The notes under the pieces were generated by a model, which did no database searches, was not told the DNA's origin, and worked only from the letters and a program-made list of their open reading frames with translations. The position numbers and the translations under genes were made by a program. A stretch of 64,000 nucleotides of DNA from Camelus ferus (taxonomy: Eukaryota), in NCBI RefSeq assembly GCF_009834535.1, contig NC_045707.1, forward strand, positions 19,406,001-19,470,000, given 5' to 3'. This document shows positions 1 through 56,200 of the stretch, in pieces. How positions within the stretch are numbered: the stretch's first letter is position 1; each line of letters opens with the position of its first letter.

Positions 1-844
1 CAAATAAACAAACATATACCTTGAAATTAAATATTCTATTACAAAAGCTTCTCTCCTGACATTGCAATGTAAACCTTACCATTTAATGAGAAGTCACAGA
101 ATGAGTGATATGAAAATGAATAAACTGGTTCAATTTACTGAGGGAAATCTTAGCTTCCTTTTAAAATAAATGCATTGTTATTATTCCTGTTATTCAGGAA
201 GGCAAACGGCTTTCATTGCTATTTTATGGATTATTCCAATAAGCTGACAAAATGTAGCTTCCATTAAGTGAATCCTTGTGTAAATAAGAGGCAAAATATA
301 AAAATATAATGTGGGATAGAGAGAGGGAGAGAATAATAAAATAATTTAGCTGGGAGAAATGTTGAAGAAAAGTTGTTTCATGGAAGATAACGTTTTATTT
401 TAGACATTTGTACAGTTTGGTGTCCTTAGCCTATGATGTAGATCCAACCTACCCAATGTCCACTCAGCCTCCTTTCTACCCTGGACTCGCTAATATCTGA
501 GGAAGTCATGGCAATAAATCCATTATCTGTGGCTTCAGAGGAGGAGCAGGAGGTTGGGAAAGTGAACATGAGAGTGGAAACTCAGAAACCTGTCACGTTG
601 TTAAAGATTTAACTCCAATGACTTTCAGATTTGGGAGACATACTCATTTAAGTGACTTTTCTCCTGACACATCTGGCTTTTCTAAATTACACTAGAGAAA
701 AATAATACAAGAATTTGGGTGATAAAAATTAGGAAATGAGATACTTATATTGGGATTGAGGAAGAAAAGACAAGGTGTTTCCCAATGGGAAGGGAAATTT
801 GGGTGGCATTTCTATTCCAGTATGTCTTAGGTTTCAGAAAAAAA

Positions 845-985
845 CTAGATTAAAATCCCTGCTCTTCCCATTTAGGTTCTGCGATTTGGATACGAGTTTT
901 AAAAATCGTTTTAGCCTGTTTACAATCTGTCAAATAGGGATTTTATAAAGAAATATTCTATGTGAAACAGACTCTGGCATATGGT
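845..985 (+). mobile_element. MIR fragment (paralogous copy at ~18637-18790, minus strand)
   Basis: AAATCCCTGCTCTTCCCATTTAGG...ATCTGTCAAATAGGGAT resembles the MIR core. Confidence 0.5.
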
Positions 986-1173
986 AAAAATCTTACTTTA
1001 AAACATGTCATCTAGTTTCATTAACTTGTTTAAAAATCTCCTAAATTAAATTAGCATGACATAATAGTTGACTTCCAGAGGCAAATTCCAATTCTATCTG
1101 TGGGTAATCCTCTTTTCTTTAAGTCTTCTCTTTGTGTTTCCTCTTGTAGTTGACACAAGAGAAGAGAAAACAA

Positions 1174-2113
1174 ATGAGGAACTACACAGTAATAAGAGAG
1201 TTCATCCTCCTGGGACTGTCCTGATGACCCACAGCTTCAGGCTGTCATCTTCATCTTTCTGCTCATCACCTACATGCTCAGCATCACTGGGAACCTGACC
1301 ATTATCACCCTGACCCTGCTGGACTCCCACCTCCAGACCCCCATGTATTTCTTCCTCAGAAACTTCTCCTTACTAGAGGTGTCATTCACAACTGTCACTA
1401 TACCCAGGTTCCTGAGCACCATTGTTACAGGAGATAAAACCATTTCCTTTGATGACTGTATGGCTCAGTTATTTTTTTTCATTCTCCTGGGAGTCACTGA
1501 ATTTTACCTATTGGCCGCCATGTCCTATGACCGCTATGTTGCCATCTGCAAACCTCTGCATTACTTGACCATCATGAACCAGAGAGTCTGCATACTGCTT
1601 GTCTTTGCTTCTTGGCTGGCTTCATTCTTAATTATATTCCCATCACTCATGCTATTTATACAGCTTGATTACTGTAAGACCAATGTCATTGACCATTTTA
1701 CTTGTGATTATTTTCCTTTATTACACCTTTCCTGTTCAGACACCAAATTCCTAGAGACAATGGGTTTTTCCTGTGCTGTGTTCACTCTAATGATCACTTT
1801 GGCACTGATATTCCTGTCCTACATATATATCATCAGCACAATTGTGCGGATTCCTTCTACCAGTCAGAGGACAAAGGCCTTTTCCACGTGTTCCTCCCAC
1901 ATGATTGTCATCTCCATCTCCTATGGCAGCTGCATCTTCATGTACATTAATCCATCAGCAAAGGATAGAGTGTCTTTGAGCAAGGGTGTGGCTGTGCTCA
2001 ACACCTCAGTAGCCCCCATGCTGAACCCCTTTATTTACAGCCTAAGGAATCAGCAAGTGAAACGAGCCTTCATGCACATGGCAAGGAAGATTGTATTTTT
2101 CTCAAGCAAATGA
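1174..2113 (+). pseudogene. OR6C1: OR6C1-like olfactory receptor pseudogene, +1 frameshift after codon 16
   Basis: ATG at 1174 reads [16 protein letters not shown] then TGA (1222-1224). The intact paralogue at 16588(-) has CTG TCC GAT GAC where this copy has CTG TCC TGA TGA. The rest of the receptor ([46 protein letters not shown]) continues in the +1 frame, which is the 279-aa ORF from 1274. Confidence 0.88.
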
Positions 2114-3639
2114 AAAAACAAATGTGCTGTTTCATAAATCAGAGGCATAATGAGAGCAATTAAATGAAAATCACGGCCTTTCAAAATCTGTTAATTTCCA
2201 CATAGCCTCCCATGAGTTATTTTTCATTGCGTATAATTTTATTGCCAGTGTGTTATCAAGAATATTTGTACATGTATATATTTTTCTTTTTTTCCTTTCA
2301 AATTCTTCATCTATATATATATTTATTCATTTTCCTTTTAAATTCTCTTCCTTCTCTCATGCACTTCCCTTCCTTTGGGCTGGTCTTTCCACTCAGTAAC
2401 TATGAGACTAAACTCAGTGCATTTTTGAAATCTTTTTTAATTCCAATTTTTCAGAATAATTTTTAGAAAATGAAAGAAAGACAGAAAGAGTTGCGGCAAG
2501 AGCACACAAGAGAGAACTGCGTCTTATGGTTCACCAGGACACACCCTTTCTAGAAATTGAGGAAATATTAAATCACGTTTAACATTATTTTTAATTTAGT
2601 ACCCAATGACCATGAACAAAGTCTGACAGTCTTCCTAGAATGTAACACATACTATCCCCGCCACATTGTGGACCGCTTAGTAAGTATGTGAAAAACAGGA
2701 CAACTGAAAGAATAACGTAATTATATTTTTTTGAGAAATCAAAAAACATTGCTCACTACTAAGTTTAAATTTTCTGTGCCGTATAATTTATCAATTCGAA
2801 AAACAATTATGACTTCATAATTGCTTAAGGAAAACTATGAAATAGCCCCTCCATTTTGGAACTCCATAATTCATTTATATACCATAAAAATTCTTAATAA
2901 AATCCTGAAGAAATAAATATTAATGGATACCAAGTATGACTATGTTTGCTGTGGCTCTGTGGTATATTTAAATAAATGATTAATGTTAAACTGGTTTTTT
3001 AATAATCAATAGCTAAGAGTTTTATAACTTTCTCATGTTTGTGGCTCTTTTGCTATAATGGCTTACACATACAATTTATTTAATTGCCTGCTTAAATGAC
3101 ACACCTAATTAATAGAAAGGAAGGCGCAGACAATGGCAAAGTTGTACTGTATTTAAAACTGAGTTTTTTTGTTAAAAAGCTTATGTTCTGTCTATTTGAA
3201 GCATCGCATTGGACAATTTACTGATTAGAAATTATATGACAATCATTACAAAATCATGCAGTTCTGGACCTGAACTTTTTTTTTTCTGTTTTCCATGAAG
3301 TCAGAAGCTGAAATAATAATGATGGTTACTTAAAATCATCCTAAATTTTTTTAACCATTTTTCTTCAAAACAAAGGCTGTAATTGTAACTCATTGAGCCA
3401 AATTCTTATTGATATTAATATACTATACACAATTCAGAGACCTACATCTATGATTTGCAAAAAAATAAAACAAAACAACTTATAGAAAAAGTACTGTGGA
3501 GACTTCCAGTTTGTAGGCAGGTCATGGAATTACTATTTCCTTCCTTCATACTGAAACTATAGTTCCTAAACTAACTGGAAACATTCAAAAATAATGAAGT
3601 TTAGACTTGATTGAAGATTGTAGGTTCTTAAGTACTCAA

Positions 3640-5210
3640 TAAAAATATACCATAAAATGCAGACGAGTATAGATCTGAGAATTAAAAGAACTGTAAAACT
3701 ATTACAAAAGATACGAAGGAGTTTATGCTGGTATTTTCAGATGATACAGCCCTCTGTATAACTCTATACAAACTCATTAGTGGTTATTACACGTTTTGAA
3801 TCTGTATCAGGATTTTGATTGTCAATACTAGAGGTCAACAAACTTTTTCTGTAAAGGGCAATATATTCATAATTTAGATTTTGCAGGTCATAGTGTCTCC
3901 CATGCAGCTCTCCCCCTCTGTAGTATCTCTGTAGCTATAAAAAAATTGTAAATGAATGAGATTAAGTATTTTCTGATAAACTGTTGAACAAAAATAGGTG
4001 GTGGGACAAATTTGGCCCATGGACCATAGTTTGTCCACCCTTGTCTTAGACTTTTCTGTGAACACTGGTCCACATATTATCTCATTTAATATAATTTGAC
4101 TAAAATGCGAAAATTCAATAATAGATGTAAGATGTTAACATTTTTAACTCCAATTTTTATTTTTTACTTTGAACTTGAATGAAAGCAATCTTACAAAACA
4201 TGTCCAGAGGAAAAAAAGAGGTAAATGTTTCTAAATCATTTTTGGATGTTTGTATAATTCTTAATGTCAAATGATAATATGAGAAATGAAAAAATCACCA
4301 GCAATTTGATTCATAAATTCGAAGATAAAATAGTAAAAGAAATTAGCAAAACTCCTATGTCATGTTGAGAACAATTTTATCCCAAAGGTAATTTATCTCT
4401 AAAAAGTCTATTTGTGGTATTTACCACATTAAAAGAGTAAAGATGGGGAAAAAAAGGTTAAAGAGAGAAAATCACACATTCTGTTAAAATCAAATGCTCA
4501 TTTATCATTTTAAAAAAATCTCTTAGTAAAATAGAACAAAACATTGTTTGAGTAGCATAAAGACCTGACTAGATCATCACAATCAGGTATGCTATATGCT
4601 CCTTAATTGGCTCTAATTTGAACAAGTCAACTATAAAATGGTATTTTGGGAAAATTGGGGACATAAGAGTTTGAGCAAAGTGATAAATAATATCAAAGAT
4701 TTTTTGTTAATTTTGCTAGCTTGAAAATTGCATTGTGGTTAAGCAAGAATACAAACATGTATTTTAGGAATTCATTCTGAAAATACACAGGAGTGAAAAG
4801 GTATGATGTTTAGGTGTTGCTTTGAAATACACCAACAAAAGAAAAATAAACTTTTAAAAAGACAGCTAAAATAATTTTTTAAACTTCATATTGTTTGAAT
4901 CTGCTTGATCTGTATGAGAAATTCATTTCTCCACTTTCCTATCTTAGTGTATATTTGAAAATATTCATAATAAAAATTACAGCAAGGATCATGCTTAATT
5001 TTTTAATCAGTAGCAACAGCCTTGGTAAAATCAGCTACAAATGAGAATGACCACTGTCTCTGCTTTTATTCAGTGCTCTGCTGTAGGTTCTATCCAGGGC
5101 ACTAGCACAAGAAAACAATATATTCAAAAGTATTGGAAAGGGGGAAACAACAACAAAAAAAGCCTTCTCTGCAAGTAACATGATTTTTCTCCCAGGGCCT
5201 TAGTATATTT
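3640..5210 (+). mobile_element. Old L1 (L1ME-like) ORF2 and 3' fragments, mirrored in arm B at ~12560-14110
   Basis: Degenerate ORF2-like and 3'UTR-like A-rich sequence with no open frame. Confidence 0.55.
3829..4043 (-). mobile_element. MER58A-like hAT-Charlie MITE (arm A copy)
   Basis: Degenerate terminal inverted repeats; reverse complement of the 13714 copy. Confidence 0.8.
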
Positions 5211-5270
5211 ACATTAAATGTTTCTTTTACCAGCAAATCTCCTCTCCCAGATATCTGCATGGTTAACACC

Positions 5271-5790
5271 CTCCCCTTCGTCAGGTCTCTGTCTAAACGT
5301 CACTTCCATAATGCCCACCCACTATTGAAAATCATACCAGCTCTCCACTTCCAAGGCTCTTCAGTTTCTTCTCCTTCACAAAATACTTATTAATGTATAA
5401 AATACCATATAATTCACTAGTCAATGATGTTCATGCCTATTGTCTATAACCTCTCACAGCCCTTACCCCATGGAAGCAGGAATCTTTGTCTCCTGCACAA
5501 AGTGATGCACTCCCAGCAGTGGTGTGCTGGAGCCCACCCAGAACACTTCCCAGTAGTCAGTTGTGCATGTCTCTCCTCAATTCTGAGGTCAGTAAGGGCA
5601 CACTGGGAGCTGGAAGCCTGCCATGGTGGGGAAGACTTTAATCATAGAAATTGACAAACTCAGCCCCTCTACTCCACCCTCCTGAGAGGCAGTTAGTTGT
5701 TCAACATTTACCAGAAGCCACTAATTCTCCTCATGTAGAACATGCATCTGCCACGTAGTGGGTACTCAATAAATATTTTTGAATAAACAA
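5271..5790 (+). mobile_element. L2 3' terminal fragment, split by MER63A
   Basis: CCATGGAAGCAGGAATCTTTGTC...GTAGTGGGTACTCAATAAATATTTTTGAATAAA resembles the L2 tail. Confidence 0.65.
5517..5723 (+). mobile_element. MER63A-like hAT-Blackjack MITE inserted in an L2 3' end
   Basis: CAGTGGTGTGCTGGAGCC...GTTGTTCAACATTTACCAGAAGCCACT termini. The arm B copy (~12335-12498) lacks the 5' end. Confidence 0.75.
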
Positions 5791-6749
5791 ATATTTTGAA
5801 ATAATTTAGAATGTTTCCAATGTCACATCAATCAGAAGCATTAACTAAATATTTTATCCAGAATAAACACATAAAATTTATAGGACAATGTAGATAACAT
5901 TGATTTAACTTTTTAAATAATGTTCAAATACAACGTTTCATCATAGCTGGATAATTTTGTATAACAAAGAAGTGATTATTTACATCTTTTCTATGGTATT
6001 TGGGGTTCATTTTTCTTCTTTTGTTTTACATTAGGCCATTTGACAATTTTTTTATTTATACTCATTTTTTGAAGTCAGTAATAATTCTTATTATGGTTTG
6101 CATTTTGAGCTAAGCTTTCTAATGGCAGGAATTTCTAAAGGATCTGAATGAACATTTATTTGTTTCCTAAAGAATTATTTTAACTATCTGGGTTATGCCC
6201 AGAGTCGTATGTGATCCAACATCATCTATGAGTTAAATACACTTCTGAAATTACAGATTCAGTTGATAGAATAATAACACAATTAAGTGATAGTATTCAG
6301 TAAGTGGCAAGCCAATCAGACATCATGCTGAGGGGCTTACCTATGAAGGATAATATCACTGGAATTAATTAGAAACATACATTGGGATTATTCAGTAATA
6401 TTCTGCCAATTCAGGTTTAAAGTTTTAAAATATTCTTATCTTTAACACTTTGATGTACTAAATGTTATTTTGGGATTCTAAACATGTTAAAGCAAAATAT
6501 ACTTGTAATTGAATTCTTCCTCCACTCTCTAAGGAGAGTAAAAGCTGGTAGCTGAACTATGTATGTTTCGTTAGCCTAAAACATAATCACTCATCAACCT
6601 CAGAATACTCGAAATAATTGGACACATTATTAAAAAGCAGCTGTCCTATTAGCTTGTGGATAGGAGTGTAATAGAGATAAATCAGTCTAAATTAAAAGTC
6701 AATTAATATGAGGCCTAGAGAAAAGCTAGAGAGCTATTAGGATCCAGGA

Positions 6750-9700: not shown

Positions 9701-10639
9701 ATGAAAAATCACACAGTACCCACAGAATTCATTCTTCTAGGACTAGCCAATGACCCAGAGCTTCAGATTGTGATTTTTCTCTTTTTAATCATCACATATA
9801 TATTAAGCGTCACTGGAAATTTGACCATCATCGCTCTCACCTTGGTGGACTCCCATCTACAGACCCCTATGTATTTCTTTCTCAGGAACTTCTCTGTATT
9901 AGAAATTTCATTTACCACTGTCTGTATCCCTAGATTTCTGGGCACAATTATCACCAGGGACAAAACTATTTCATACAACAATTGTACCACTCAGTTGTTT
10001 TTCTTTATCTTCATGGGTATAACTGAATTTTATCTTCTAACTGCCATGTCCTATGATCGTTACGTGGCTATCTGCAAACCCCTGCATTACACAACCATCA
10101 TGAATAAAAGAGTCTGCATATTGCTTGTCTTTTTTGCTTGGCTGGCAGGATTCCTAAATATTTTCCCTCCAGTTATTCTTTTTCTCCAGTTAGATTACTG
10201 TGGCTCCAATATTATTGATCACTTTGCTTGTGACTATTTCCCCCTCTTGCAATTGTCCTGCTCAGACACGTGGCTCCTAGAAGTGATTGGTTTTTACTCT
10301 GCAATCGTGATTCTGCTTTTCACTTTGGCCTTAATAATTCTATCCTACATGTTCATCATTAAGACAATTCTGAAACTGCCTTCTGCTAGTCAGAGAAAAA
10401 AGGCATTTTCTACATGCTCCTCTCACATGATCGTCATTTCCATCTCTTATGGAAGCTGCATCTTCATGTATGCCAACCCTTCAGCAAAAGAAAAGGCATC
10501 CTTGACAAAAGGAGTAGCTATTTTGAATACTTCTGTTGCTCCTATGATGAATCCATTTATATATACCCTGAGGAACCAGCAAGTGAAGCAAGCATTTAAG
10601 GATACCATCCAAAAGGTCATGTTTTATTCTAGTAAATGA
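9701..10639 (+). CDS. Olfactory receptor, OR6C subfamily, OR6C3-like paralogue (312 aa)
   Basis: Intact single-exon ORF with N-glycosylation site [42 protein letters not shown] and [12 protein letters not shown]. Its closest relative in the window is the 29024 gene (shared [22 protein letters not shown] and [11 protein letters not shown]). Confidence 0.95.
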
Positions 10640-11870: not shown

Positions 11871-11974
11871 GGAGGGGAGGGTATAGCTCAGTGGTAGATT
11901 GTGTGCTTAGCATGCACAAGGTACTAGGTCCTATCCCTACCTTCATTAATAAATAAACAAACAAACAAATAAAT
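11871..11974 (+). mobile_element. tRNA-derived SINE resembling camelid Vic-1
   Basis: GGGGAGGGTATAGCTCAGTGGTAG (A box), degenerate B box, (AAAT/AAAC)n tail, and 8-bp TSD AAAAACAG (11863-11870 and 11975-11982). Confidence 0.8.
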
Positions 11975-13713
11975 AAAAACAGTTGTTAAGTGGCATAATA
12001 TAAAATAAAAAAGAAAAATGAACACTAAAAAAAAAATACCTTAAATATATCCAATTCATTATTTCTTTGTCATACTAAGTTGTCTAGCCATGATGAAAAT
12101 ACACATTTATTTGAACACTATTTTAAAAGCTAAATCAATGTTGTGTATGTTATTATATAAATTATATGTGTTTATTTTGGGTAAAATGTTTTTTTTAAAT
12201 GTTTTTTTTAAAGCTGCTGATTACCGTGACATTGGAACCATTCTAAATTATTTTAAAGTATTTATTTATTTAAAAAAAATTTATTGAGTATCTACTACAT
12301 GGTAGATGCATGTTCTGCACAAGGAGGATTAGTGACTTCTGGTAAATGTTTAACAACTGCCTGTTGGCAGATGGAGAAGAGGAGCTGATTTGTAGAGTTT
12401 GTCAGTTTCTATGATGGTCTCTCACCATAGCAGATTTCAAGCTACAAATGTGCCCTTGACTGACCACAAAATTGAGTAGACTTGCACAATTGGCTTCTGG
12501 TGTTAACCATGCAGATACCTGGGAGAGGAGACTTGCCAGTGTAAGAACATTTAGTGTAAATACACTAAGGTTTTAGGAGGAAAATCATGTCATTTGCAAA
12601 GAAAGATTTTTTTTGTTTCCCTCTTTCCAATAATTTTAAATATATTTGTTTTCTTATGCTAGTGCCCTGAATAGAACCTCCAGCAGAGCACTGAATAAAA
12701 GCAGTGACAGTGGTCATTCTCTTCTTGTAGCTGATTTTACCAAGGCTGTTACTATTGTTTAAATAAATTAGGCATATTTGCTGTAATTTTTAAATCATAT
12801 GCTAGGATAGAGAACTGGAAAAGTAAATCTCATGTACAGATCAAGCAGATTCAAAAACTATGAAGATTTTTAAAAATACTTGCTTTAACTGTCTTTTTAA
12901 AATTTCTTAAAAATTTGTTGACATATTATAAACCAGAACTTAAACATATCTTTCACTCCTGTATACTTTCAGTATGAAATTCCTAAAATACAAGCTTGTT
13001 TTCTTGCTTAACTACAGTGCAATTTCCAAGCTAGGAAAATTGACATGCACACACACACAAAATTTTGTTGTCATTTATCACCTTGCCCTTACTGACATAT
13101 CCCCAGTCGTTCCAAAATATCATTTTATACTTGACTTGTTCAAATTAGAGCCAAACAAGGAACATACAGCCTACCTGGCTGTGATGATTGAGTCATGTCT
13201 TTAATGCTACTGAAACAATGTTCTGTTCTATTTTACTAAGAGATTTTTAAAAATCATGAATGGCATTACATTTTATCAAAGGAGGTGTGATTTTCTTTTT
13301 TTCACTTTTTTTAATCTTTAATTTTTTAATGTTTAAATTCCTCAAGAACGCTTTCTAAATATCAATTACTTTTGGGATAAAATCATATGGAACATGAAAT
13401 AGTAGTTTGCTAATTTCCTTCAGTATTTTATCTCCTAATTTAACAGTCAAGTTGCTGGTGATTTTTCATTTCTCAGATTATCTTTGGATACCAAGAATGA
13501 CATAAAAGAACAAAAATGAGTTAGAAATGTTTACCTCTTCTTTTCTTCTGGAACTGTTTTATAAGATTGCTCTCGTTCATGCTCATTATAAAAAAATTAA
13601 AGTTGGTGTTAAATTTAAAAATCTTACATCTATTACTGAATTTTCACATTTTAGTCAAACTACATTACATTAAATGAGAACATGTGGGTCAATGTTTATA
13701 GAAAAATCTAAGA

Positions 13714-13936
13714 CAGGGGTTGAAAAACTATGGTCCACGGGCCGAATTTGGCCCACCATATATTTGTGTTCAATAGTTTATCAGAACACACCTAAGCCCG
13801 TTCATTTACACGTTGTTTATAGCTGTATTCACACTACAAAGAGGGAGAGTTGAGTAGTTGCATAAGAGACACTATGACCTGCAAAATCTAAATTATTAAT
13901 GTATTGTCCTTTACAGAGAAAGTTTATTAACCTCTC
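13714..13936 (+). mobile_element. MER58A-like hAT-Charlie MITE (arm B copy)
   Basis: CAGGGGTTGAAAAACTATGGTCCACGGGCCGAATTTGGCCC...GAGTTGAGTAGTTGC...CCTTTACAGAGAAAGTTT follows the MER58A consensus. Confidence 0.85.
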
Positions 13937-15649
13937 ATATCGATAATCAAAATGCTCAGATTCCAAACATTTACAATAACCACTAAGGAGGCCGTATAGA
14001 GTGTTACAGAGGGATGCATCGTCTCCTAAGACCAGCATAAACTCCTTCATATCTTTTGTAATAGTTTTACAGTTCTTTTAATTCTCAGATCTATACTTGT
14101 CTGAATTTTATGGTATATTTTTATTGAGTACTTAAGAACCTACAATCATCAATCAAGTCTAAACTTCATTATTTTTGAATGTTTCCAGTTTAGTTTAGGA
14201 ACTGTAGTTTCAGTATGAAGGAAGGAAATAATAACTCCATTACCTCTCTGCAAAATGCAAATGTCACTTTTTAAAATACGTTGTTTTGTTTGTTTTTCAG
14301 CACATCATAGACCTGAGTCTGTCAACTGCATATACTACATGACTATCAAGGAGAATCTGGTTCAATGAATTAACAATTACAGCCTTTGTTTTGCAGAAAA
14401 AATGGTTAAAAAAATTTAGGATGATTTTGAGCAACATTATTATTATTTCAGGTTTTGAATTCATGGAAAATGGGAAAAGAAAAGTTTGGGCCAGAATTGC
14501 ATGATCCTATATGATCATCACAGAAATCCTAATTAGCATGTTTTCCAATATGATGCCATATTCTGATGCTTAAAAAAGAACATAAATTTTTTTTAATTTT
14601 AATTTTATATACAGTGAAACTTTGCCATTGTTAGCTATTTTCTACCAATTTAACTAGGCTTGTCTTTTAAGTAAGCAATTATGTAAATAGTATGTGTAAT
14701 CTATTATATTAAAATAGCCACAAATATGAGAAAGTTACAAAACTCTTAGCTACTGATTATCCAAAGACCAGCTTAACATCAGGCATTTGTTTAAATGCAC
14801 TACTGAGCCACAGCAAATGTAGTCATATTTGGCATCTAGTAATATTTATCTCTCCAGGCTTCTATTAAGAATTGTTATATATGTAAGTTAATTTTGAAGT
14901 TCCAAAAAAAAAATGGGGCGTTTCATACTTTTTCCCTGAGCAACTGTGTATTCAAAACAGTGTTTTGAATTGATAAATTATATGGCACAGAAAATTTTAA
15001 ACTTAGTAGTGAGAAATGTTTTTCATTTCTCAAAAAATATAATTACATTATTCTTTCAGTTGTCCTGTTTTTCACATAGTTACTAAGTGGTCCACAATGT
15101 GGCGGGGATAGTATGTGTAACATTCTAGGAAGACTGTCAGATTTTGCTTATGGTCATTGGGTACTAAATTAAAAATAATGTTAAACATGATTTAATATTT
15201 CCTCAATTTCTAGAAAGGGTGTGTCCTGGTGAACCATAAGACGCAGTTCTCTCTTGTGTGCTCTTGCCCCAACTCTTTCTGTCTTTCTTTCATTTTCTAA
15301 AAATTATTCTGAAAAATTGGAATTAGAAAAGATTTCAAAAATGCACTGAGCTTAGTCTCATAGTTACTGAGTGGAAAGACCAGCCCAAAGGAAGGGAAGT
15401 GCATGAGAGAAGGAAGAGAATTTAAAAGGAAAATGAATAAATATATATACAGATGAAGAATTTGAAAGGAAAAAAAGAAAAATATATACATATACAAATA
15501 TTCTTGATAACACACTGGCAATAAAATTATAAGCAATGAAAAATAACTCTTGGGAGACTATGAGGAAATTAATAGATGTTGAGAACCCTGATTTTCATTT
15601 AATTTCTCTACTTTATGCCTCTAATTTATGGAAGAGCACATTTGTTTTT

Positions 15650-16588
15650 TCATTTGCTTGAGAAAAATACAATCTTCCTTGCCATGTGCATGAAGGCTCG
15701 TTTCACTTGCTGATTCCTTAGGCTGTAAATAAAGGGGTTCAGCATGGGGGCTACTGAGGTGTTGAGCACAGCCACACCCTTGCTCAAAGACAGTCTGTCT
15801 TTTGCTGATGGTTTAATGTACATGAAGATACAGCTACCATAAGAAATGGAGATGACAATCATGTGGGAAAAACACGTGGAAAAGGCCTTTGTCCTCTGAC
15901 TGGTAGAAGGAATCCGCACAATTGTGCTGATGATATATATGTAGGACAGGAATATCAGTGCCAAAGTGAACATTAGAGTGAACACCGCGCAGGAAAAAAG
16001 CATTGTCTCCAGGAATTTGGTGTCTGAACAAGAAAGGTGTAATAAGGGGGAAAAATCGCAAGTAAAATGGTCGATGACATTGGACTTACAGTAATAAAGC
16101 TGTATGGATATCATAAGTAATGGGAATGTGATTAAGAATGAAGCCAGCCAAGAAGCAAAGACAAGCAGTATGCAGACTCTCTGGTTCATGATGGTCAAGT
16201 AATGCAGAGGTTTGCAGATGGCAACATAGCGGTCATAGGACATGGCGGCCAATAGGTAAAATTCAGTGACTCCCAGGAGAATGAAAAAAAATAACTGAGC
16301 CATACAGTCATCAAAGGAAATGGTTTTATCTCCTGTAACAATGGTGCTCAGGAACCTGGGTATAGTGACAGTTGTGAATGACACCTCTAGTAAGGAGAAG
16401 TTTCTGAGGAAGAAATACATGGGGGTCTGGAGGTGGGAGTCCAGCAGGGTCAGGGTGATAATGGTCAGGTTCCCTGTGATGCTGAGCATGTAGGTGATGA
16501 GCAGAAAGATGAAGATGACAGCCTGAAGCTGTGGGTCATCGGACAGTCCCAGGAGGATGAACTCTCTTATTACTGTGTAGTTCCTCAT
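15650..16588 (-). CDS. OR6C1: Olfactory receptor OR6C1-like (312 aa), intact copy
   Basis: The true ATG is at 16588 (MRNYTV...). The track's TTG start at 16615 is the first base after the splice acceptor. All OR motifs are present and the sequence resembles human OR6C1 as I recall it. Confidence 0.93.
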
Positions 16589-16781
16589 TTTTTTTTTTCT
16601 CTTCTCTTGTGTCAACTACAAGAGGAAACACAAAGAGAAGACTTAAAGAAAAGAGGATTACCCACAGATAGCATTGGAATTTGCCTCTGGAAGTCAACTA
16701 TTATGCCATGCTAATTTAATTTAGGAGATTTTTAAAACAAGTTCATGAACATAGATGACATGTTTTAAAGTAAGATTTTTA

Positions 16782-18622
16782 TGAAAGAGCCTATATGATC
16801 AAATAATCAAACTTACCCTGTAAACAAAATTAATCTTGATTTGGCTATATTTAATAAAAATGAAGGTAACATTAAAGAGAAAAAGATTTTATTTTAGTGG
16901 ATATTAAATTCCAGTTTTGTTAATTGAGGTCTGTATTTACTAAGACTCACTTCCCAAATCATTGCTTGCTGTTGTTACATTGCGGCAAAGGTTAATTAAA
17001 TTATTAAAGACACTCTAGGTTTATTTCTGAAGCTCAGTAATCTATCCTTGGTGGAAGATCTGATGCCCCATCACCTTCAACCAGGGGATTATACATACTG
17101 GAACAGGCATGACTTAAAGAACTGTCTCCAACCTGGATGGAAGGACCCTTTATCAGGTACTCTTAACCAGACCATGCACAGTGAAACCTAAAGGAAATTG
17201 ACTTTTGGATTAATTTCCAGTCAGAAAGAGCCCTTGCACTGGCCTACAGAGTAGTGCTCACCTTAAAACAATGCTCAAATGGAGAAGAAGCTACCAGGCC
17301 ACGATGAGAAGACGACAACATCTGAGGTAGACAGTTGACCGAAGACACCAGACCAGGCCTGTTTACCAATTACTTTGATAATTGTTCATACCTTTGATTA
17401 TGAACTAATCCAATTGTTAGGTTTATGGTAAATTACCTATATCTAGTACTTCTGTGTTACCTTGGCGGGTTTCCCTACTCCAAGGCTCTCACAAGATAGC
17501 CCTCAGAAAATTTATTCTAAAAAGAAATTATAGTTCTGTTTAGGCCACTGTTGACATTACAAGGTGGGAGGCCTCACCTGGCCAATTAATAATACCTGCT
17601 CTGAGCCTGACCATGAATATGAATTTTCTTATAAGATCACTCAAGCTCAATCAGAAACACAAGGAAAATTTTAACCCAAAAAGGTAACTTCTCGACTATT
17701 AAATTCTTACTCGTGACTTTATTAACATTACTAGCTGTATTATTGATACCCTGTCTATTTTATAAGATTGTTCTCTCTTACATTTTCCAGTGTGTAACTA
17801 GGCCTCCAACAAGATTGATGATGGCTAAACATCTTGAGGAAAACGATAAAATTTACAAATTTATAACTGCATAGAATAATTTTAATAGTGTGATTCTAGG
17901 TATGGGAATGAGCAACAAGGGGTAAACATTTCCTGGATCATAATACACTAGTAAGACAGGTGATCCAGAGAATTTTTAGTATCAACAGGCCTGATCCAAA
18001 AACTAGCACTTTGAGTGGCATGTCAACAGATACTTCACCAGATATAGGAATGAGCCTTCCTAGCACCATGAGACAAAATTGGTCATGAAATGTCTCCCAA
18101 AATATTGGTCGAATTTAGGACCAAGGGGGAGCACTGTCAACTAAAATACTGCAATCATATCAGTAAACAAAGAATGCTGAAACCAAGTCATCAGCGGCTG
18201 CCACCACCCCCCAGTGAGAACAGGCCTACAGCCCAGCCTCTGTAGCCACTCACAATGGTGCAACTCTGAGGGGACTCAGAATAAGAAAGGACAGGATACT
18301 GGCCCTAGATAGCCAGATGCTTGTCAAAGGAATGAGTTAAATGAGCCCACATGTTTCCTTCCTCCCATACATAGAAAAGCACTAAATTCTTTAACTTGAG
18401 ATGTCTGGTTTTCTTTAGATACCAAGCACTCTTTTATTGTTCAAAATACCTGGTCTTTGTTGTAAAGCTCCTATATATCCAACCTCCTCCCCCACCTCTT
18501 CAGAGCAGTCCCTCAGAGCAATCTGAGGGGCTGTCATCCCGGCTCGAGTCCTCTTGCCAAATAAAACATAACTCTAAAAAATAAATGAATGAATGAATGA
18601 ATGAATGAATGAATTAAAAAAT
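16782..18622 (+). mobile_element. 5'-truncated ERV1 (MER4-group-like) internal fragment plus U3-R LTR and A-rich tail, flanked by a ~15-bp TSD
   Basis: Degraded integrase C-terminus at 17069-17168 (HHLQPGDYTYWNRHDLKNCLQPGWKDP/YQVLLT). Purine tract at ~18123-18131, LTR from TG at 18135, AATAAA at 18560-18565, tail at 18576-18622. TSD AAAGTAAGATTTTTA (16767-16781) versus AAACTGAGATTTTTA (18623-18637). Confidence 0.85.
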
Positions 18623-20190
18623 AAACTGAGATTTTTACCATATGTCAGTGTCTGTTTCAAATATAATGTTTCTTTATAAAATCCCTATTTGACTGAGTGG
18701 AAACAGGTTAAAATGATTTTTAAAAATCCTATCCAAATCACAGAACCTAAATGGGAAGAGCAGGGATTTTAACCTGGGTTTTTCTAAAACCTAGGAATAC
18801 TGGAATACAAATGCTACCTGTTTACTTCTTAAAAGCCTCCCCCTAAATGACTCCCTTCCCAATGGGAAACACCTTGTCTTTTCTTCCACTCCAATAAAAG
18901 CATCTGATTTCCTAATTTTTGTCACCCAAATTCCTGTAATATTATTTCCTAGTGTAATATAGAAAAGCCAGATGTGTCAGGAAAAAGGTCACTCAAATGG
19001 GTATGTCTCCCAAATCTGAAAGTCATTGGAGTTAAATCTTTAACAACGTGACAGCTTTCTGAGTTTCCACTCTCACGGTCACTTTCCCAACCTCCTGCTC
19101 CTCCTCTGAAGCCACAGATAATGGATTTATTGCCATGACTTCCTCAGACTTAGCGAGTCCAAGGGAGAAAGGATGTAGACTAGACACTGAGTTTTGGATC
19201 TGCATTATGGGTCAAGGACACCAAACTGTACAAATGTCTAAAATAAAATGTTACCCTCCATCAAACATTTTTTCTCCAAAATTTCTCACATCTAAGTGAT
19301 ATTAGTATTCTCTCACTCTATATATATTCTACTATCTCATATATTTTTATATTTTGCCTTTTATCTACATCAGGATTCACTTAATAGAAGTTCTATTTTG
19401 TCAGCACATTAGAGTAATCATGAAATAGCAATGAAAACCATTGATTTTGTCTTCCTAAATAACAGTAGTAATAATAATGCATTTATTTTAAAAAGAAACT
19501 AAGTTTCCTCAATAAATTTCCTCAGTACATTTTCATATCAGTAATTCTGTGAATTCGCATTACATGGTCAAGTTTACATTCCAATGTCAGGAGAGAATTT
19601 TCTACAATAGAATGTTTAATTTCAAGATACACGTTTGTTGATTTCTGGTATGTGATACATCGTAATACTATGAAATTTCTCAACTTTGTTTTCTTCCCTT
19701 ACATACGTGAGCTTTCTTTTCACTTACTTCACTTTCTAGCAAAAAACTATTGCTGCTTTCAAATTAAGGAAAATTCCAGTTGAAGTGGATGGTGGCCAAG
19801 GCTACTGCGAGAGCATGTGAAGTTCACAAGAAAATGAACTTATTCTTTCACTATTCCTCAGAGACTAGAGAAAAAGTCTTAACAGCACTTAGAAGAAAAA
19901 CAGACATTATAAATACATATTCTGTGAATAAATTTATGGCCATTCAAGAATGATAGATACTTACAAATGTAAAATTCATTGTTCTCAATGAACAATCTTC
20001 TGGGATTAATAGCTGTGTGTGATTCTTTGATCTGTAAACCATTTCTGGGATGTTTCTGGTAAAGTAATCAATGCTATATCTAAGTCAGTAAGACATCCTT
20101 TCAGACTTTCCTTCCTAACTATTCATTCACATTTTTTCCTAGTCCTATGTGATTTATGATAACAAGCTTCATATTCCTTTCTATTCCTTC

Positions 20191-55384: not shown

Positions 55385-56110
55385 ATCCACTCATCCATCA
55401 ATGGACACCTAGGTTGTTACAATGCTTGACTAAATGTAAATAATGCTGCAATAAACACAGGAGTGCAGGTATCTTTTCAAGTTAGTGTTTTTATTTTCTT
55501 CAGATAAATATCCAGAAATAGAATTGCTGGATGGTATGGTAGTTCTATTTTTAGCTTTTGAAGACTTTCCATACGGTTTTCCATAGTGGTTGCATCAATT
55601 TACATTCCCACCAACAGTGCACAAGAGTTCTCTATTCTCTACATCCTCTCCAATAGTGGTTATTTCTTATCTTGTTGATAACANNNNNNNNNNNNNNNNN
55701 NNNNNNNNNNNNNNNNNNNNNNNNNNNNNNNNNNNNNNNNNNNNNNNNNNNNNNNNNNNNNNNNNNNNNNNNNNNNNNNNNNNNNNNNNNNNNNNNNNNN
55801 NNNNNNNNNNNNNNNNNNNNNNNNNACCATTTNNNNNNNNNNNNNNNNNNNNNNNNNNNNNNNNNNNNNNNNNNNNNNNNNNNNNNNNNNNNNNNNNNNN
55901 NNNNNNNNNNNNNNNNNNNNNNNNNNNNNNNNNNNNNNNNNNNNNNNNNNNNNNNNNNNNNNNNNNNNNNNNNNNNNNNNNNNNNNNNNNNNNNNNNNNN
56001 NNNNNNNNNNNNNNNNNNNATTTCTGTTTTTCTTGCTCTGCCAAAAAAGTGTTGCCAAGACCAATGCCAAGGAGCTTTTCCCCTGTTTTCTTCCTTTTCT
56101 TTTATGACTC
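55385..56110 (-). mobile_element. Younger L1 3'/ORF2 fragment, antisense, with N-gaps
   Basis: ATCCACTCATCCATCAATGGACACCTAGGTTG...CATCAATTTACATTCCCACCAACAGTGCACAAG. Confidence 0.88.
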
Positions 56111-56200
56111 ATTTGTGAAAAAGTGACTTTAAAATAATGGACAAAAATACTCTTTCCAAGGGCATTTTTTTTTCAGAGATTCAGTTCTGTACTGCTTCTT

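What the first reader, a model, noticed from the sequence alone, without database searches (positions are those of the whole stretch)
1631..1970. Divergence between the OR6C1 twins survives only over TM4-ECL2-TM5 and TM6-ECL3
Seen: the proteins are identical for ~120 aa (TM1-TM3-ICL2) and for TM7 to the C-terminus. They differ at 13 residues, 10 of them in TM4-TM5 ([52 protein letters not shown]) and 3 in TM6-ECL3. I count ~22 nucleotide differences in ~1631-1794 and ~10 in ~1890-1970, about nine of those in the first island synonymous, so these are retained old sequence rather than only selected point changes. Established: TM3-TM6 and ECL2 line the OR ligand pocket. Inference: selection removed conversion events that would erase odorant specificity, leaving a homogenised scaffold with protected specificity islands.
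Basis: partly seen in the sequence, partly recalled or inferred. Interest (0 to 1): 0.72.

Follow-up and report, generated by a model that had tools for sequence, protein, structure and literature searches.

The report
Unconverted islands in twin camel odorant receptors
Two neighbouring camel smell-receptor genes keep overwriting each other's DNA, except in two short coding stretches (and one non-coding stretch); the larger coding stretch carries odorant-pocket residues, a known kind of pattern that selection probably helps maintain but that is not proven here.

Summary
Arm A (1174-2113, +) and arm B (15650-16588, -) differ at 22 nt in 1633-1793, 10 nt in 1893-1970 and 13 residues.

The two genes sit in a ~6 kb inverted duplication whose arms are about 80% identical. 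A ~1.7 kb patch (985-2731) has been homogenised by interlocus gene conversion.

The same mosaic is fixed in four camelid assemblies and predates the camel/alpaca split. Conversion continues in the scaffold segments.

For selection:
- A third OR6C1 paralog outside the window shows the same islands.
- Between camel and seal, the scaffold groups by species but island 1 groups by paralog.
- Five differences hit pocket positions 4.57, 4.60, 45.52/53 and 5.39.
- Ten of 12 polarised replacements are on the intact B copy.

Against selection:
- An equally divergent non-coding island lies at 2129-2231.
- A is frameshifted here and broken in alpaca.
- dN/dS is below 1.
- The placement test gives P=0.07.
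- Mismatch-blocked conversion alone could freeze the islands.

This is a new example of the known "peak of divergence under gene conversion" pattern.

The parts
1..6059 (+). Arm A of an old inverted duplication
   Evidence: BLAST and MAFFT against the reverse complement of 11969-19644. Background identity is about 78-87%, with converted patches at 534-633, 985-2731, 3530-3728 and 4997-5094.
11969..19644 (-). Arm B of the inverted duplication
   Evidence: Present in full in dromedary, C. bactrianus and alpaca.
1174..2113 (+). OR6C1-type gene, arm A copy; one extra base at 1220-1222 shifts the frame after codon 16
   Evidence: The same gene is intact in C. bactrianus (P0005, L006) and dromedary (P0003, L001). 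In alpaca it is broken by +T at the equivalent of 1471 and +AGAG at 1966.
15650..16588 (-). OR6C1-type gene, arm B copy; intact, 312 aa
   Evidence: Near-identical intact orthologues exist in C. bactrianus, dromedary and alpaca (P0002, P0121, P0122). Gap-free match to consOR6, E=5e-127.
985..2731 (+). Main converted patch on arm A (partner 15032-16781 on arm B)
   Evidence: 95-100% identity against about 80% background. The 5' limit coincides with the 1.8 kb insertion present only in arm B.
1633..1793 (+). Island 1, arm A side (TM4 end, ECL2, TM5 start; residues 154-207)
   Evidence: 22 substitutions: 11 synonymous, 11 non-synonymous; dS 0.41, dN 0.09. Of the 22 differing positions, 17 are fixed paralog differences in all four camelids; the other five (1679, 1705, 1732, 1777, 1793) vary between species.
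15970..16130 (-). Island 1, arm B side
   Evidence: It carries the derived states T154, L157, I160, S161, Y165, F179, S180 and L197. T154, I160, S161, Y165 and L197 occur in 0-1 of 107 non-camelid OR6C1 proteins.
1893..1970 (+). Island 2, arm A side (TM6 to ECL3; residues 240-266)
   Evidence: 10 substitutions: 7 synonymous, 3 non-synonymous; dS 0.61, dN 0.05. Both outermost differences are non-synonymous.
15793..15870 (-). Island 2, arm B side
2129..2231 (+). Island 3: non-coding, 16-118 bp past the stop codon (partner 15532-15634)
   Evidence: 14 substitutions and 2 one-base indels. Twelve of the differing positions are fixed paralog differences in all four camelids. Polarised with seal: 5 B-derived, 4 A-derived.
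1289..1632 (+). Homogenised scaffold segment 1 (TM1-TM4 start); zero A/B differences
   Evidence: Species-specific states shared by A and B at 1268, 1516, 1525 and 1565-1567 show conversion after the camel lineages split.
1794..1892 (+). Homogenised scaffold segment 2 (TM5 end, ICL3)
   Evidence: 0 differences in Camelus. The alpaca-specific state at 1847 is shared by A and B.
1971..2128 (+). Homogenised scaffold segment 3 (TM7, C-terminus, first 15 bp past the stop)
   Evidence: 0 differences in Camelus, 1 in alpaca.
16782..18621 (.). 1.8 kb insertion present only in arm B; bounds the converted patch upstream
Evidence: Gap in the arm alignment. Present in all four camelids.
9701..10639 (+). 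Different OR6C gene in the spacer between the arms (72% nt identity to A/B); used as outgroup

Best explanation
The window comes from a camel OR6C cluster, probably Camelus ferus. An OR6C1-type gene was duplicated in inverted orientation after the camel and carnivore lineages separated but before camels and alpacas split. The arms have since drifted to about 80% identity.

Non-allelic (interlocus) gene conversion then homogenised a ~1.7 kb patch centred on the coding sequence. It left three stretches unconverted: island 1 (1633-1793), island 2 (1893-1970) and a non-coding island (2129-2231). Conversion is still running in the scaffold segments. It also involves a third OR6C1 paralog, C, which lies about 39 kb upstream of A in dromedary and shares homology with A/B only over the coding sequence.

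The islands are genuinely old sequence. Copy A keeps the ancestral 'A-type' TM4-ECL2-TM5. Copy B acquired about ten amino-acid replacements there, several at odorant-pocket positions, and has since been conserved.

My reading is that two forces acting together keep the coding islands. First, converted alleles that erase pocket residues are removed by selection; this applies to B, and to the older A-type versus C-type difference. Second, the resulting ~13% mismatch density makes the recombination machinery reject heteroduplex there.

Shown: the mosaic, its age, the ongoing conversion, and the polarity of the changes. Inferred: that selection on ligand specificity, rather than chance plus a mismatch barrier, decided where the coding islands lie.
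For: Conversion:
- Arm identity is about 80% against 95-100% in 985-2731.
- 18 of 19 synonymous differences lie in the islands, P about 1e-10. The longest identical run is 344 nt, P about 5e-6.

Age:
- The islands consist mostly of paralog differences fixed in C. ferus, C. bactrianus, dromedary and alpaca: 17 of 22 positions in island 1, 9 of 10 in island 2 and 12 of 16 in island 3.
- In the 5' flank, K(A,B)=0.145 against 0.31-0.32 to seal.

Ongoing conversion:
- Eight sites carry lineage-specific states shared by A and B (1221, 1268, 1516, 1525, 1565-1567, 1847). Several match paralog C.

Non-random placement:
- Paralog C shows pS of 0.08-0.10 to A/B in the scaffold, but 0.43-0.47 in island 1 and 0.34-0.42 in island 2.
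- In segment trees with grey seal, scaffold 1 groups by species (bootstrap 87 and 97). Island 1 groups by paralog (C camel + C seal 95; camelid A+B 91).
- Quartet sites: 35 species-pattern against 2 paralog-pattern in the scaffold, versus 7 against 12 in island 1; Fisher P=6e-6.
- The other OR6C paralogs are not less alike in the island segments, so a pre-existing identity gradient does not predict the islands.

Function:
- The protein aligns without gaps to consOR6/OR6A2. Residue 157 is therefore 4.60, the Schiff-base lysine of OR6A2.
- With W147 as 4.50, C177 as 45.50, Y216 as 5.58 and Y257 as 6.55, the differences fall at 4.57, 4.60, 45.52, 45.53 and 5.39. In OR51E2, 4.57, 4.60 and 5.39 contact the ligand, and mutating 4.57 or 4.60 retunes chain-length selectivity.

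Polarity:
- Replacements are 10 B-derived against 2 A-derived (P=0.04). Synonymous changes are 9 against 6, and non-coding island 3 is 5 against 4, so both are symmetric.
- B states T154, I160, S161, Y165, L197, F240 and L266 occur in 0-1 of 107 non-camelid homologues.
- Since the camel/alpaca split, B's islands show 1 non-synonymous and 4 synonymous changes, while A's show 4 and 1.
Against: - Island 3 (2129-2231) is non-coding but as divergent, as sharp-edged and as old as the coding islands. Small converted patches are also scattered through non-coding arm DNA (534-633, 3530-3728, 4997-5094). Patchiness therefore needs no selection on ligand binding.
- Arm A is frameshifted here and carries two indels in alpaca, yet B has not overwritten its islands.
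- dN/dS in the islands is 0.22 and 0.08. The lineage N/S contrasts are not significant by Fisher test (P=0.24 and 0.21).
- Random placement of three islands in the converted patch gives the observed overlap with TM3-TM6 at P=0.07. The P=0.01 result uses a region chosen after seeing the data.
- Island 2 has only three replacements. One of them (S240F, 6.38) is on the cytoplasmic side, not in the pocket.
- In seal, the synonymous contrast between island and scaffold is weak (pS 0.17 against 0.06-0.14). The ancient paralog-specific core is only about 1606-1685.
- The seven synonymous species-pattern sites of island 1 lie mostly outside that core, at 1699-1787.
- All four camelids inherit one mosaic, so they count as one observation.
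Confidence: 0.58

Rival explanations
1. Neutral patchwork. One or a few old, discontinuous conversion events happened to leave three stretches unconverted. Once a stretch is about 13% diverged, heteroduplex rejection and the lack of long identical seeds keep later conversion out of it. The islands then persist indefinitely without any selection on odorant specificity. Their overlap with TM4-TM5 and TM6 is coincidence.
For: - The non-coding island 2129-2231 has the same density, sharp edges and age as the coding islands.
- Converted patches are scattered in non-coding arm DNA.
- A's islands persist although A is frameshifted here and broken in alpaca.
- The placement null gives P=0.07.
- dN/dS is below 1.
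- All post-split conversion signals lie inside segments that were already identical.
Against: - A third paralog with no flank homology has islands at the same two places.
- Island 1 groups by paralog across camel and seal while the scaffold groups by species. The block has therefore resisted conversion in two orders.
- Unconverted OR6C paralogs are not less alike in these segments; island 2 lies in one of the most conserved stretches.
- Replacements are concentrated on B (10 against 2) while silent and non-coding changes are symmetric.
- Five differences sit at known pocket positions.
Confidence: 0.34
2. Imported islands. The whole coding sequence was once fully homogenised, and the islands were later written into one copy by short conversion tracts from some other OR6C gene. 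On this reading the divergence is foreign rather than retained.
For: - Synonymous divergence in the islands (18 differences over 51.6 sites) exceeds the non-coding arm background of about 0.20 (P about 0.01-0.03).
- B looks more derived overall, 19 against 8.
- Paralog C demonstrably donates short tracts to A and B in the scaffold (1565-1567 in dromedary; 1494-1511 in C. bactrianus B).
Against: - At 11 sites B's states match none of the five other OR6C genes in the window.
- Seven of B's residues occur in 0-1 of 107 non-camelid OR6C1 proteins.
- B's island is farther from C than A's island is.
- Synonymous changes lie on both lineages (9 against 6).
- Island 3 is non-coding, polarises symmetrically, and lies where C has no homology.
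- In the island 1 tree A and B are sisters (bootstrap 91).
Confidence: 0.05
3. Differential constraint only. There is no conversion; the identical parts are simply the most conserved parts of an OR, and the islands are the variable parts.
For: TM4-ECL2-TM5 has a higher replacement density than TM1-TM3 in unconverted OR6C1 paralog pairs of rhinoceros and horse.
Against: - Silent sites are identical outside the islands (1 synonymous difference over 163 sites, against 18 over 52 inside).
- Identity extends into non-coding flanks that are otherwise about 20% diverged.
- A and B share species-specific substitutions.
- The scaffold tree groups by species.
Confidence: 0.01

Closest known systems
Peak of divergence under interlocus gene conversion: primate red/green opsin exon 5 (Teshima and Innan 2008, as reviewed in PMC3924837)
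   Same: Neighbouring duplicates are kept nearly identical by ongoing conversion. There is a short stretch where orthologues are more alike than paralogs, flanked by stretches where paralogs of one species are more alike than orthologues. That stretch contains residues that tune ligand (chromophore) specificity in a 7TM receptor.
   Different: - In the opsins the tuning residues are proven experimentally; here function is inferred from homology to solved ORs.
- The duplicates here are inverted rather than tandem, and the gene has a single coding exon, so peak and valleys lie within one exon.
- There is also a peak in non-coding DNA, and one copy is a pseudogene in two of four genomes.
Region-restricted conversion in clustered receptor families, e.g. 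the protocadherin clusters (Noonan et al. 2004, cited in PMC3924837) and primate OR clusters (Sharon et al. 1999, from my own knowledge; not read here)
   Same: There is concerted evolution among clustered paralogs. Some segments are homogenised while the segments that carry specificity stay diverse.
   Different: This locus offers a three-paralog case (A, B, C) dated by four camelid assemblies and a carnivore. I did not find a paper describing it for OR6C1 or camelids in four literature searches that touched on it.
Solved OR structures: consOR6/OR6A2 (9LDV-9LE2) and OR51E2 (8F76)
   Same: The protein aligns without gaps over residues 1-312 to consOR6. The twin differences fall at 4.57, 4.60 and 5.39, which contact ligand in OR51E2. 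Position 4.60 carries the Schiff-base lysine in OR6A2.
   Different: The camel proteins carry S, L or A at 4.60, not lysine. No ligand is known for any OR6C1. My own AlphaFold model was of low confidence (pLDDT 43.5), so the mapping rests on sequence numbering only.

Membership tests
Class II odorant receptor, OR6 family / OR6C1 group | Significant full-length similarity to OR6-family receptors and 7tm_4 domain | tested here: met
   Gap-free 1-312 match to consOR6, E=5e-127. Closest database proteins are named OR6C1 or OR6C1-like and carry PF13853.
Class II odorant receptor, OR6 family / OR6C1 group | Intact single-exon ORF of about 310 aa with the OR motifs (MxYDRY, KAFSTCxSH, NPxIY) | tested here: met
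   Arm B is intact at 312 aa with MSYDRY and NPFIY; its KAFSTC motif reads KAFSTCFSH because of S240F. Arm A fails in this genome because of the frameshift at 1220-1222.
Interlocus gene conversion / concerted evolution | Silent-site and non-coding identity far above the background divergence of the duplication | tested here: met
   0-2.6% difference in the scaffold segments of 985-2731 (about 5% over the whole patch, islands included), against about 20% in the rest of the arms. There is 1 synonymous difference outside the islands against 18 inside.
Interlocus gene conversion / concerted evolution | Paralogs of one species more alike than orthologues of different species | tested here: met
   The scaffold 1 tree groups camelid A, B and C together (bootstrap 87) and seal A and C together (97). 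There are 35 species-pattern sites against 2 paralog-pattern sites.
Interlocus gene conversion / concerted evolution | Lineage-specific substitutions shared by both copies | tested here: met
   Sites 1221, 1268, 1516, 1525, 1565-1567 and 1847.
Selection-maintained peak of divergence (Teshima-Innan type) | A narrow peak of divergence, silent sites included, flanked by converted sequence | tested here: met
   Island 1 has 22 differences in 161 nt and island 2 has 10 in 78 nt, between runs of 344, 99 and 158 identical nt.
Selection-maintained peak of divergence (Teshima-Innan type) | Inside the peak, orthologues are more alike than paralogs | tested here: met
   For A against B this holds across four camelids. 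For A-type against C-type it holds across camel and seal in island 1 (bootstrap 95) and at 1951/1954 in island 2.
Selection-maintained peak of divergence (Teshima-Innan type) | Peaks are confined to sites where a functional difference is selected | tested here: not met
   An equivalent peak lies in non-coding DNA at 2129-2231.
Selection-maintained peak of divergence (Teshima-Innan type) | Both copies functional and under selection | tested here: inconclusive
   B is intact in all four genomes. A is intact in C. bactrianus and dromedary, but frameshifted here and broken in alpaca. The frameshift could not be checked in reads.
Selection-maintained peak of divergence (Teshima-Innan type) | The residues in the peak cause a difference in ligand specificity | not testable with these tools
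   There is only positional homology to pocket residues of solved ORs.

The most novel reading that the evidence does not exclude
The TM4-ECL2 block (about 1606-1685, with residues 4.57, 4.60 and neighbours) and the 6.57 site form a specificity cassette. It has kept A-type and C-type OR6C1 receptors distinct for the whole time since camels and carnivores separated, while the rest of the gene has been repeatedly homogenised within each lineage. The camelid B copy is a later neofunctionalised offshoot, protected in the same way. If so, silent-site peaks of divergence in concertedly evolving OR paralogs would give a sequence-only map of the residues that set odorant tuning.
Probability: 0.4. Interest if true: 0.6.

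Novelty: new member of a known kind. Interest (0 to 1): 0.45.

Why it matters
Odorant receptors are hard to deorphanise, and only a handful of structures exist. A locus where conversion erases everything except what must stay different would point directly at tuning residues. Here those residues are 4.57, 4.60, 45.52/53, 5.39 and 6.57 of OR6C1.

The locus also offers a natural three-way swap experiment: A, B and C share a scaffold and differ in their cassettes. It is a clean, dated example for models of neofunctionalisation under gene conversion. The non-coding island serves as an internal neutral control and cautions against reading every such peak as selection.

The principle itself is established for opsins and protocadherins, so the gain is a new case and a testable residue list, not a new mechanism.

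Tried and rejected
1. Checking the arm A frameshift in public reads failed. The second (1000-1253) returned only Logan contigs that stop at 1202, so nothing covers 1220-1222. The frameshift remains unverified.

2. AlphaFold2 on arm B with a 77-sequence alignment gave mean pLDDT 43.5. I used it only for helix boundaries and ran no fold search. Residue mapping rests on the gap-free alignment to consOR6 and on conserved anchors.

3. I tested whether islands lie where paralogs were already least alike. Among the five other OR6C genes of the window the island segments are not less identical: 0.70 and 0.77, against 0.70-0.75 for the scaffold.

4. I tested for a third-paralog donor of the islands. 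No in-window paralog and no non-camelid homologue carries B's states.

5. The excess of synonymous species-pattern sites in island 1 looked like evidence that conversion enters the island but replacements are filtered out. Most of those sites lie at 1699-1787, outside the ancient core, so the contrast is positional and I do not rely on it.

6. A cluster of alpaca-A-specific states at 1075-1163 looked like proof that later conversion in Camelus overwrote ~9% diverged DNA. Seal matches only 2 of the 8 states, so this is inconclusive.

7. Within-species OR6C1 paralog pairs of seal, bear, hyaena and vampire bat show the same protein-level shape: few N-terminal differences and many at residues 144-207. 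Only the seal pair was checked at DNA level.
Full report
**What is in the window.** The window holds seven OR6C-type odorant-receptor ORFs.

The finding concerns two of them. Arm A runs 1174-2113 (+) and arm B runs 15650-16588 (-). They lie in an inverted duplication whose arms span about 1-6059 and 19644-11969, around a spacer that carries another OR6C gene at 9701-10639.

Arm B holds a 1.8 kb insertion (16782-18621) that arm A lacks. Arm A has one extra base at 1220-1222 that shifts the frame after codon 16, so its longest ORF starts at 1274.

The best database match to arm B carries masked names and sits on a 65.96 Mb contig. That is the length listed for a Camelus ferus protein, so the genome is probably the wild Bactrian camel.

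**The observation.**
- There are 22 substitutions in 1633-1793 and 10 in 1893-1970.
- There are none in 1289-1632, 1794-1892 or 1971-2128.
- There are 13 amino-acid differences, ten at residues 154-207 and three at 240-266.
- Island 1 has 11 synonymous and 11 non-synonymous differences (dS 0.41, dN 0.09).
- Island 2 has 7 synonymous and 3 non-synonymous differences (dS 0.61, dN 0.05).

Eighteen of the 19 synonymous differences lie in islands that hold 24% of the synonymous sites (P about 1e-10). A 344-nt identical run has P about 5e-6.

It lies 16-118 bp past the stop codon (2129-2231) and holds 14 substitutions plus two one-base indels.

**It is gene conversion in an old duplication.** Away from the gene the arms are 65-88% identical per 100 bp, about 80% on average. 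In contrast, 985-2731 is 95-100% identical. Further small near-identical patches lie at 534-633, 3530-3728 and 4997-5094.

Differential constraint cannot explain identity at silent sites and in the flanks.

In the 5' flank K(A,B)=0.145, against 0.31-0.32 to the grey seal orthologous region. A-specific and B-specific changes there are symmetric, 58 against 49. The duplication is therefore younger than the camel-carnivore split.

**Age and dynamics.** I fetched both arms from C. bactrianus, C. dromedarius and Vicugna pacos.

The mosaic is the same in all four genomes.
- Most island positions are paralog differences fixed in all four species: 17 of 22 in island 1, 9 of 10 in island 2 and 12 of 16 in island 3. 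The remainder are later lineage-specific changes.
- Only one such fixed site (1288) lies in the coding scaffold.
- The mosaic therefore predates the camel/alpaca split, and the four genomes count as one observation of island placement.

Conversion has continued since. Eight sites carry lineage-specific states shared by A and B: 1268 and 1565-1567 in dromedary; 1516 and 1525 in the Bactrian camels; 1221 and 1847 in alpaca.

A is intact in C. bactrianus and dromedary. It is frameshifted here. In alpaca it carries +T at 1471 and +AGAG at 1966.

**A third participant.** Camelids have a third close OR6C1 paralog, C (313 aa). In dromedary it lies about 39 kb upstream of A, outside this window. Its homology to A/B is confined to the coding sequence, at 92.5%.

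Silent-site divergence between C and A/B follows the same mosaic:
- pS 0.08-0.10 in the scaffold segments;
- pS 0.43-0.47 at residues 144-207;
- pS 0.34-0.42 at residues 239-266.

Several of the lineage-specific states shared by A and B match C. So C donates short tracts into the scaffold.

**An independent lineage.** In grey seal, the gene at the A position (L009, flanks homologous to the camel arms) and the C orthologue (L010) are 95% identical over the coding sequence only.

Segment trees:
- Scaffold 1 (1174-1603) groups by species: camelid A+B+C with bootstrap 87, seal A+C with 97.
- Island 1 (1604-1795) groups by paralog: camelid C with seal C at 95; camelid A+B at 91, next to seal A.

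Quartet site counts are 35 species-pattern against 2 paralog-pattern in scaffold 1, versus 7 against 12 in island 1 (Fisher P=6e-6).

The ancient paralog-specific core is about 1606-1685, plus 1951/1954, which gives N259 in A-type and K259 in C-type.

The seal's silent-site contrast is weak, pS 0.17 against 0.06-0.14.

At the protein level, paralog pairs in bear, hyaena and vampire bat show the same shape. I did not check these at DNA level.

**Polarity.** I used seal A, the C genes and two in-window paralogs as outgroups. Nineteen A/B differences are B-derived and eight are A-derived.

| Class of change | B-derived | A-derived | Test |
|---|---|---|---|
| Non-synonymous | 10 | 2 | P=0.04 |
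| Synonymous | 9 | 6 | near-symmetric |
| Non-coding island 3 | 5 | 4 | symmetric |

B's states T154, I160, S161, Y165, L197, F240 and L266 occur in 0-1 of 107 non-camelid OR6C1 homologues.

Since the camel/alpaca split, B's islands show 1 non-synonymous and 4 synonymous changes, while A's show 4 and 1. The numbers are too small for significance.

So A is the conservative, ancestral-type copy and is being lost in some lineages. B is a diverged copy that is retained everywhere.

**Mapping to the pocket.** The protein aligns without gaps to consOR6 and bmOR6A2. Residue 157 is therefore 4.60, where OR6A2 forms its reversible Schiff base.

I used W147=4.50, C177=45.50, Y216=5.58 and Y257=6.55 as anchors. 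The A/B differences then sit at these positions:

| Difference | Generic position |
|---|---|
| I154T | 4.57 |
| S157L | 4.60 |
| L160I, F161S | 4.63, 4.64 |
| Y179F, F180S | 45.52, 45.53 |
| G197L | 5.39 |
| I207F | 5.49 |
| S240F | 6.38 |
| N259K | 6.57 |
| V266L | ECL3 |

In OR51E2, 4.57, 4.60 and 5.39 contact propionate, and alanine at 4.57 or 4.60 retunes chain-length selectivity.

Position 4.60 differs in all three camel paralogs: S in A, L in B and A in C.

My own AlphaFold model was of low confidence (pLDDT 43.5). I used it only to confirm helix boundaries.

**Weighing selection against a neutral mosaic.**

For selection:
- The islands recur in a third paralog and in a second order.
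- Orthologues are more alike than paralogs inside island 1.
- Unconverted OR6C paralogs are not less alike in the island segments.
- Replacements are in excess on B at pocket positions.
- Both outermost differences of island 2 are non-synonymous (chance 0.07).

Against selection:
- The non-coding island, and the scattered non-coding converted patches.
- A's islands persist in two pseudogenised copies.
- dN/dS is well below 1.
- About 13% mismatch is by itself expected to block heteroduplex extension. Once formed, islands would stay. This last point rests on general knowledge of identity-dependent recombination; I did not test it here.

I put about 0.58 on the combined model, in which selection helps place and hold the coding islands and the mismatch barrier then locks them. 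I put about 0.34 on a purely neutral patchwork, 0.05 on imported islands and about 0.01 on constraint alone.

**Comparison with what is known.** This is the 'peak of divergence under gene conversion' pattern worked out for primate red/green opsins and described for other clustered families (PMC3924837). I did not find this locus, or OR6C1 in general, described in that way in the literature searches I ran. That is not proof of absence.

I therefore rate it a new member of a known kind. Its useful extras are a three-paralog system, a dated history and an internal non-coding control.

The scan's own earlier notes on this window (s1-149150, s1-149308) agree with the duplication-and-conversion framework and with the arm B insertion.

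Noticed in passing
window 16782-18621: A 1.8 kb insertion is present only in arm B and is shared by dromedary, C. bactrianus and alpaca. The 5' limit of the converted patch (985 on arm A) coincides with it, as if the heterology stops conversion.
   Followed up: partly
outside the window; L005:10001-10942 (dromedary), L004:10001-12135 (alpaca): A third OR6C1 paralog ('C', 313 aa, ending QKQMK) lies about 39 kb upstream of arm A in dromedary. It shares only the coding sequence with A/B and exchanges short tracts with them.
   Followed up: yes
window 1565-1567 and 1494-1511 equivalents in L001/L002 (dromedary) and L007 (C. bactrianus): Dromedary A and B both carry the C-type codon at 1565-1567 (L132T). 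C. bactrianus B alone carries C-type states at 1494, 1510 and 1511 (V107A). These look like recent, short C-to-A/B conversion tracts, some perhaps still polymorphic.
   Followed up: partly
L008 about 1440-2385 (alpaca arm A): Alpaca arm A is a pseudogene with +T in a T-run (equivalent of 1471) and +AGAG (equivalent of 1966). No gene is called there.
   Followed up: partly
window 1893-1933: Six consecutive A/B differences (1893, 1894, 1918, 1921, 1927, 1933) all have C in arm A and T in arm B, none in CpG context by eye. Four polarise as C-to-T on B (1893, 1918, 1927, 1933); 1894 and 1921 could not be polarised. The directional run is unexplained.
   Followed up: no
window 1093 (partner 16672): The three camels have A=T and B=G, while alpaca has A=G and B=T. 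This apparent reciprocal swap at one site could be two independent conversions or a trace of exchange between the inverted arms. Gene order and orientation are the same in alpaca (L008).
   Followed up: partly
window 2614-2621: A mini-island of three fixed paralog differences (2614, 2616, 2621) lies inside the otherwise homogenised 2232-2731 stretch and is shared by all four camelids.
   Followed up: no
window 1288 (partner 16475): A single synonymous A/B difference is fixed in all four camelids in the middle of the homogenised scaffold. It has survived although conversion signals lie on both sides.
   Followed up: no
The two 150-178 aa 'ORFs' at 55590-56126 are artefacts of reading through them.
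   Followed up: no
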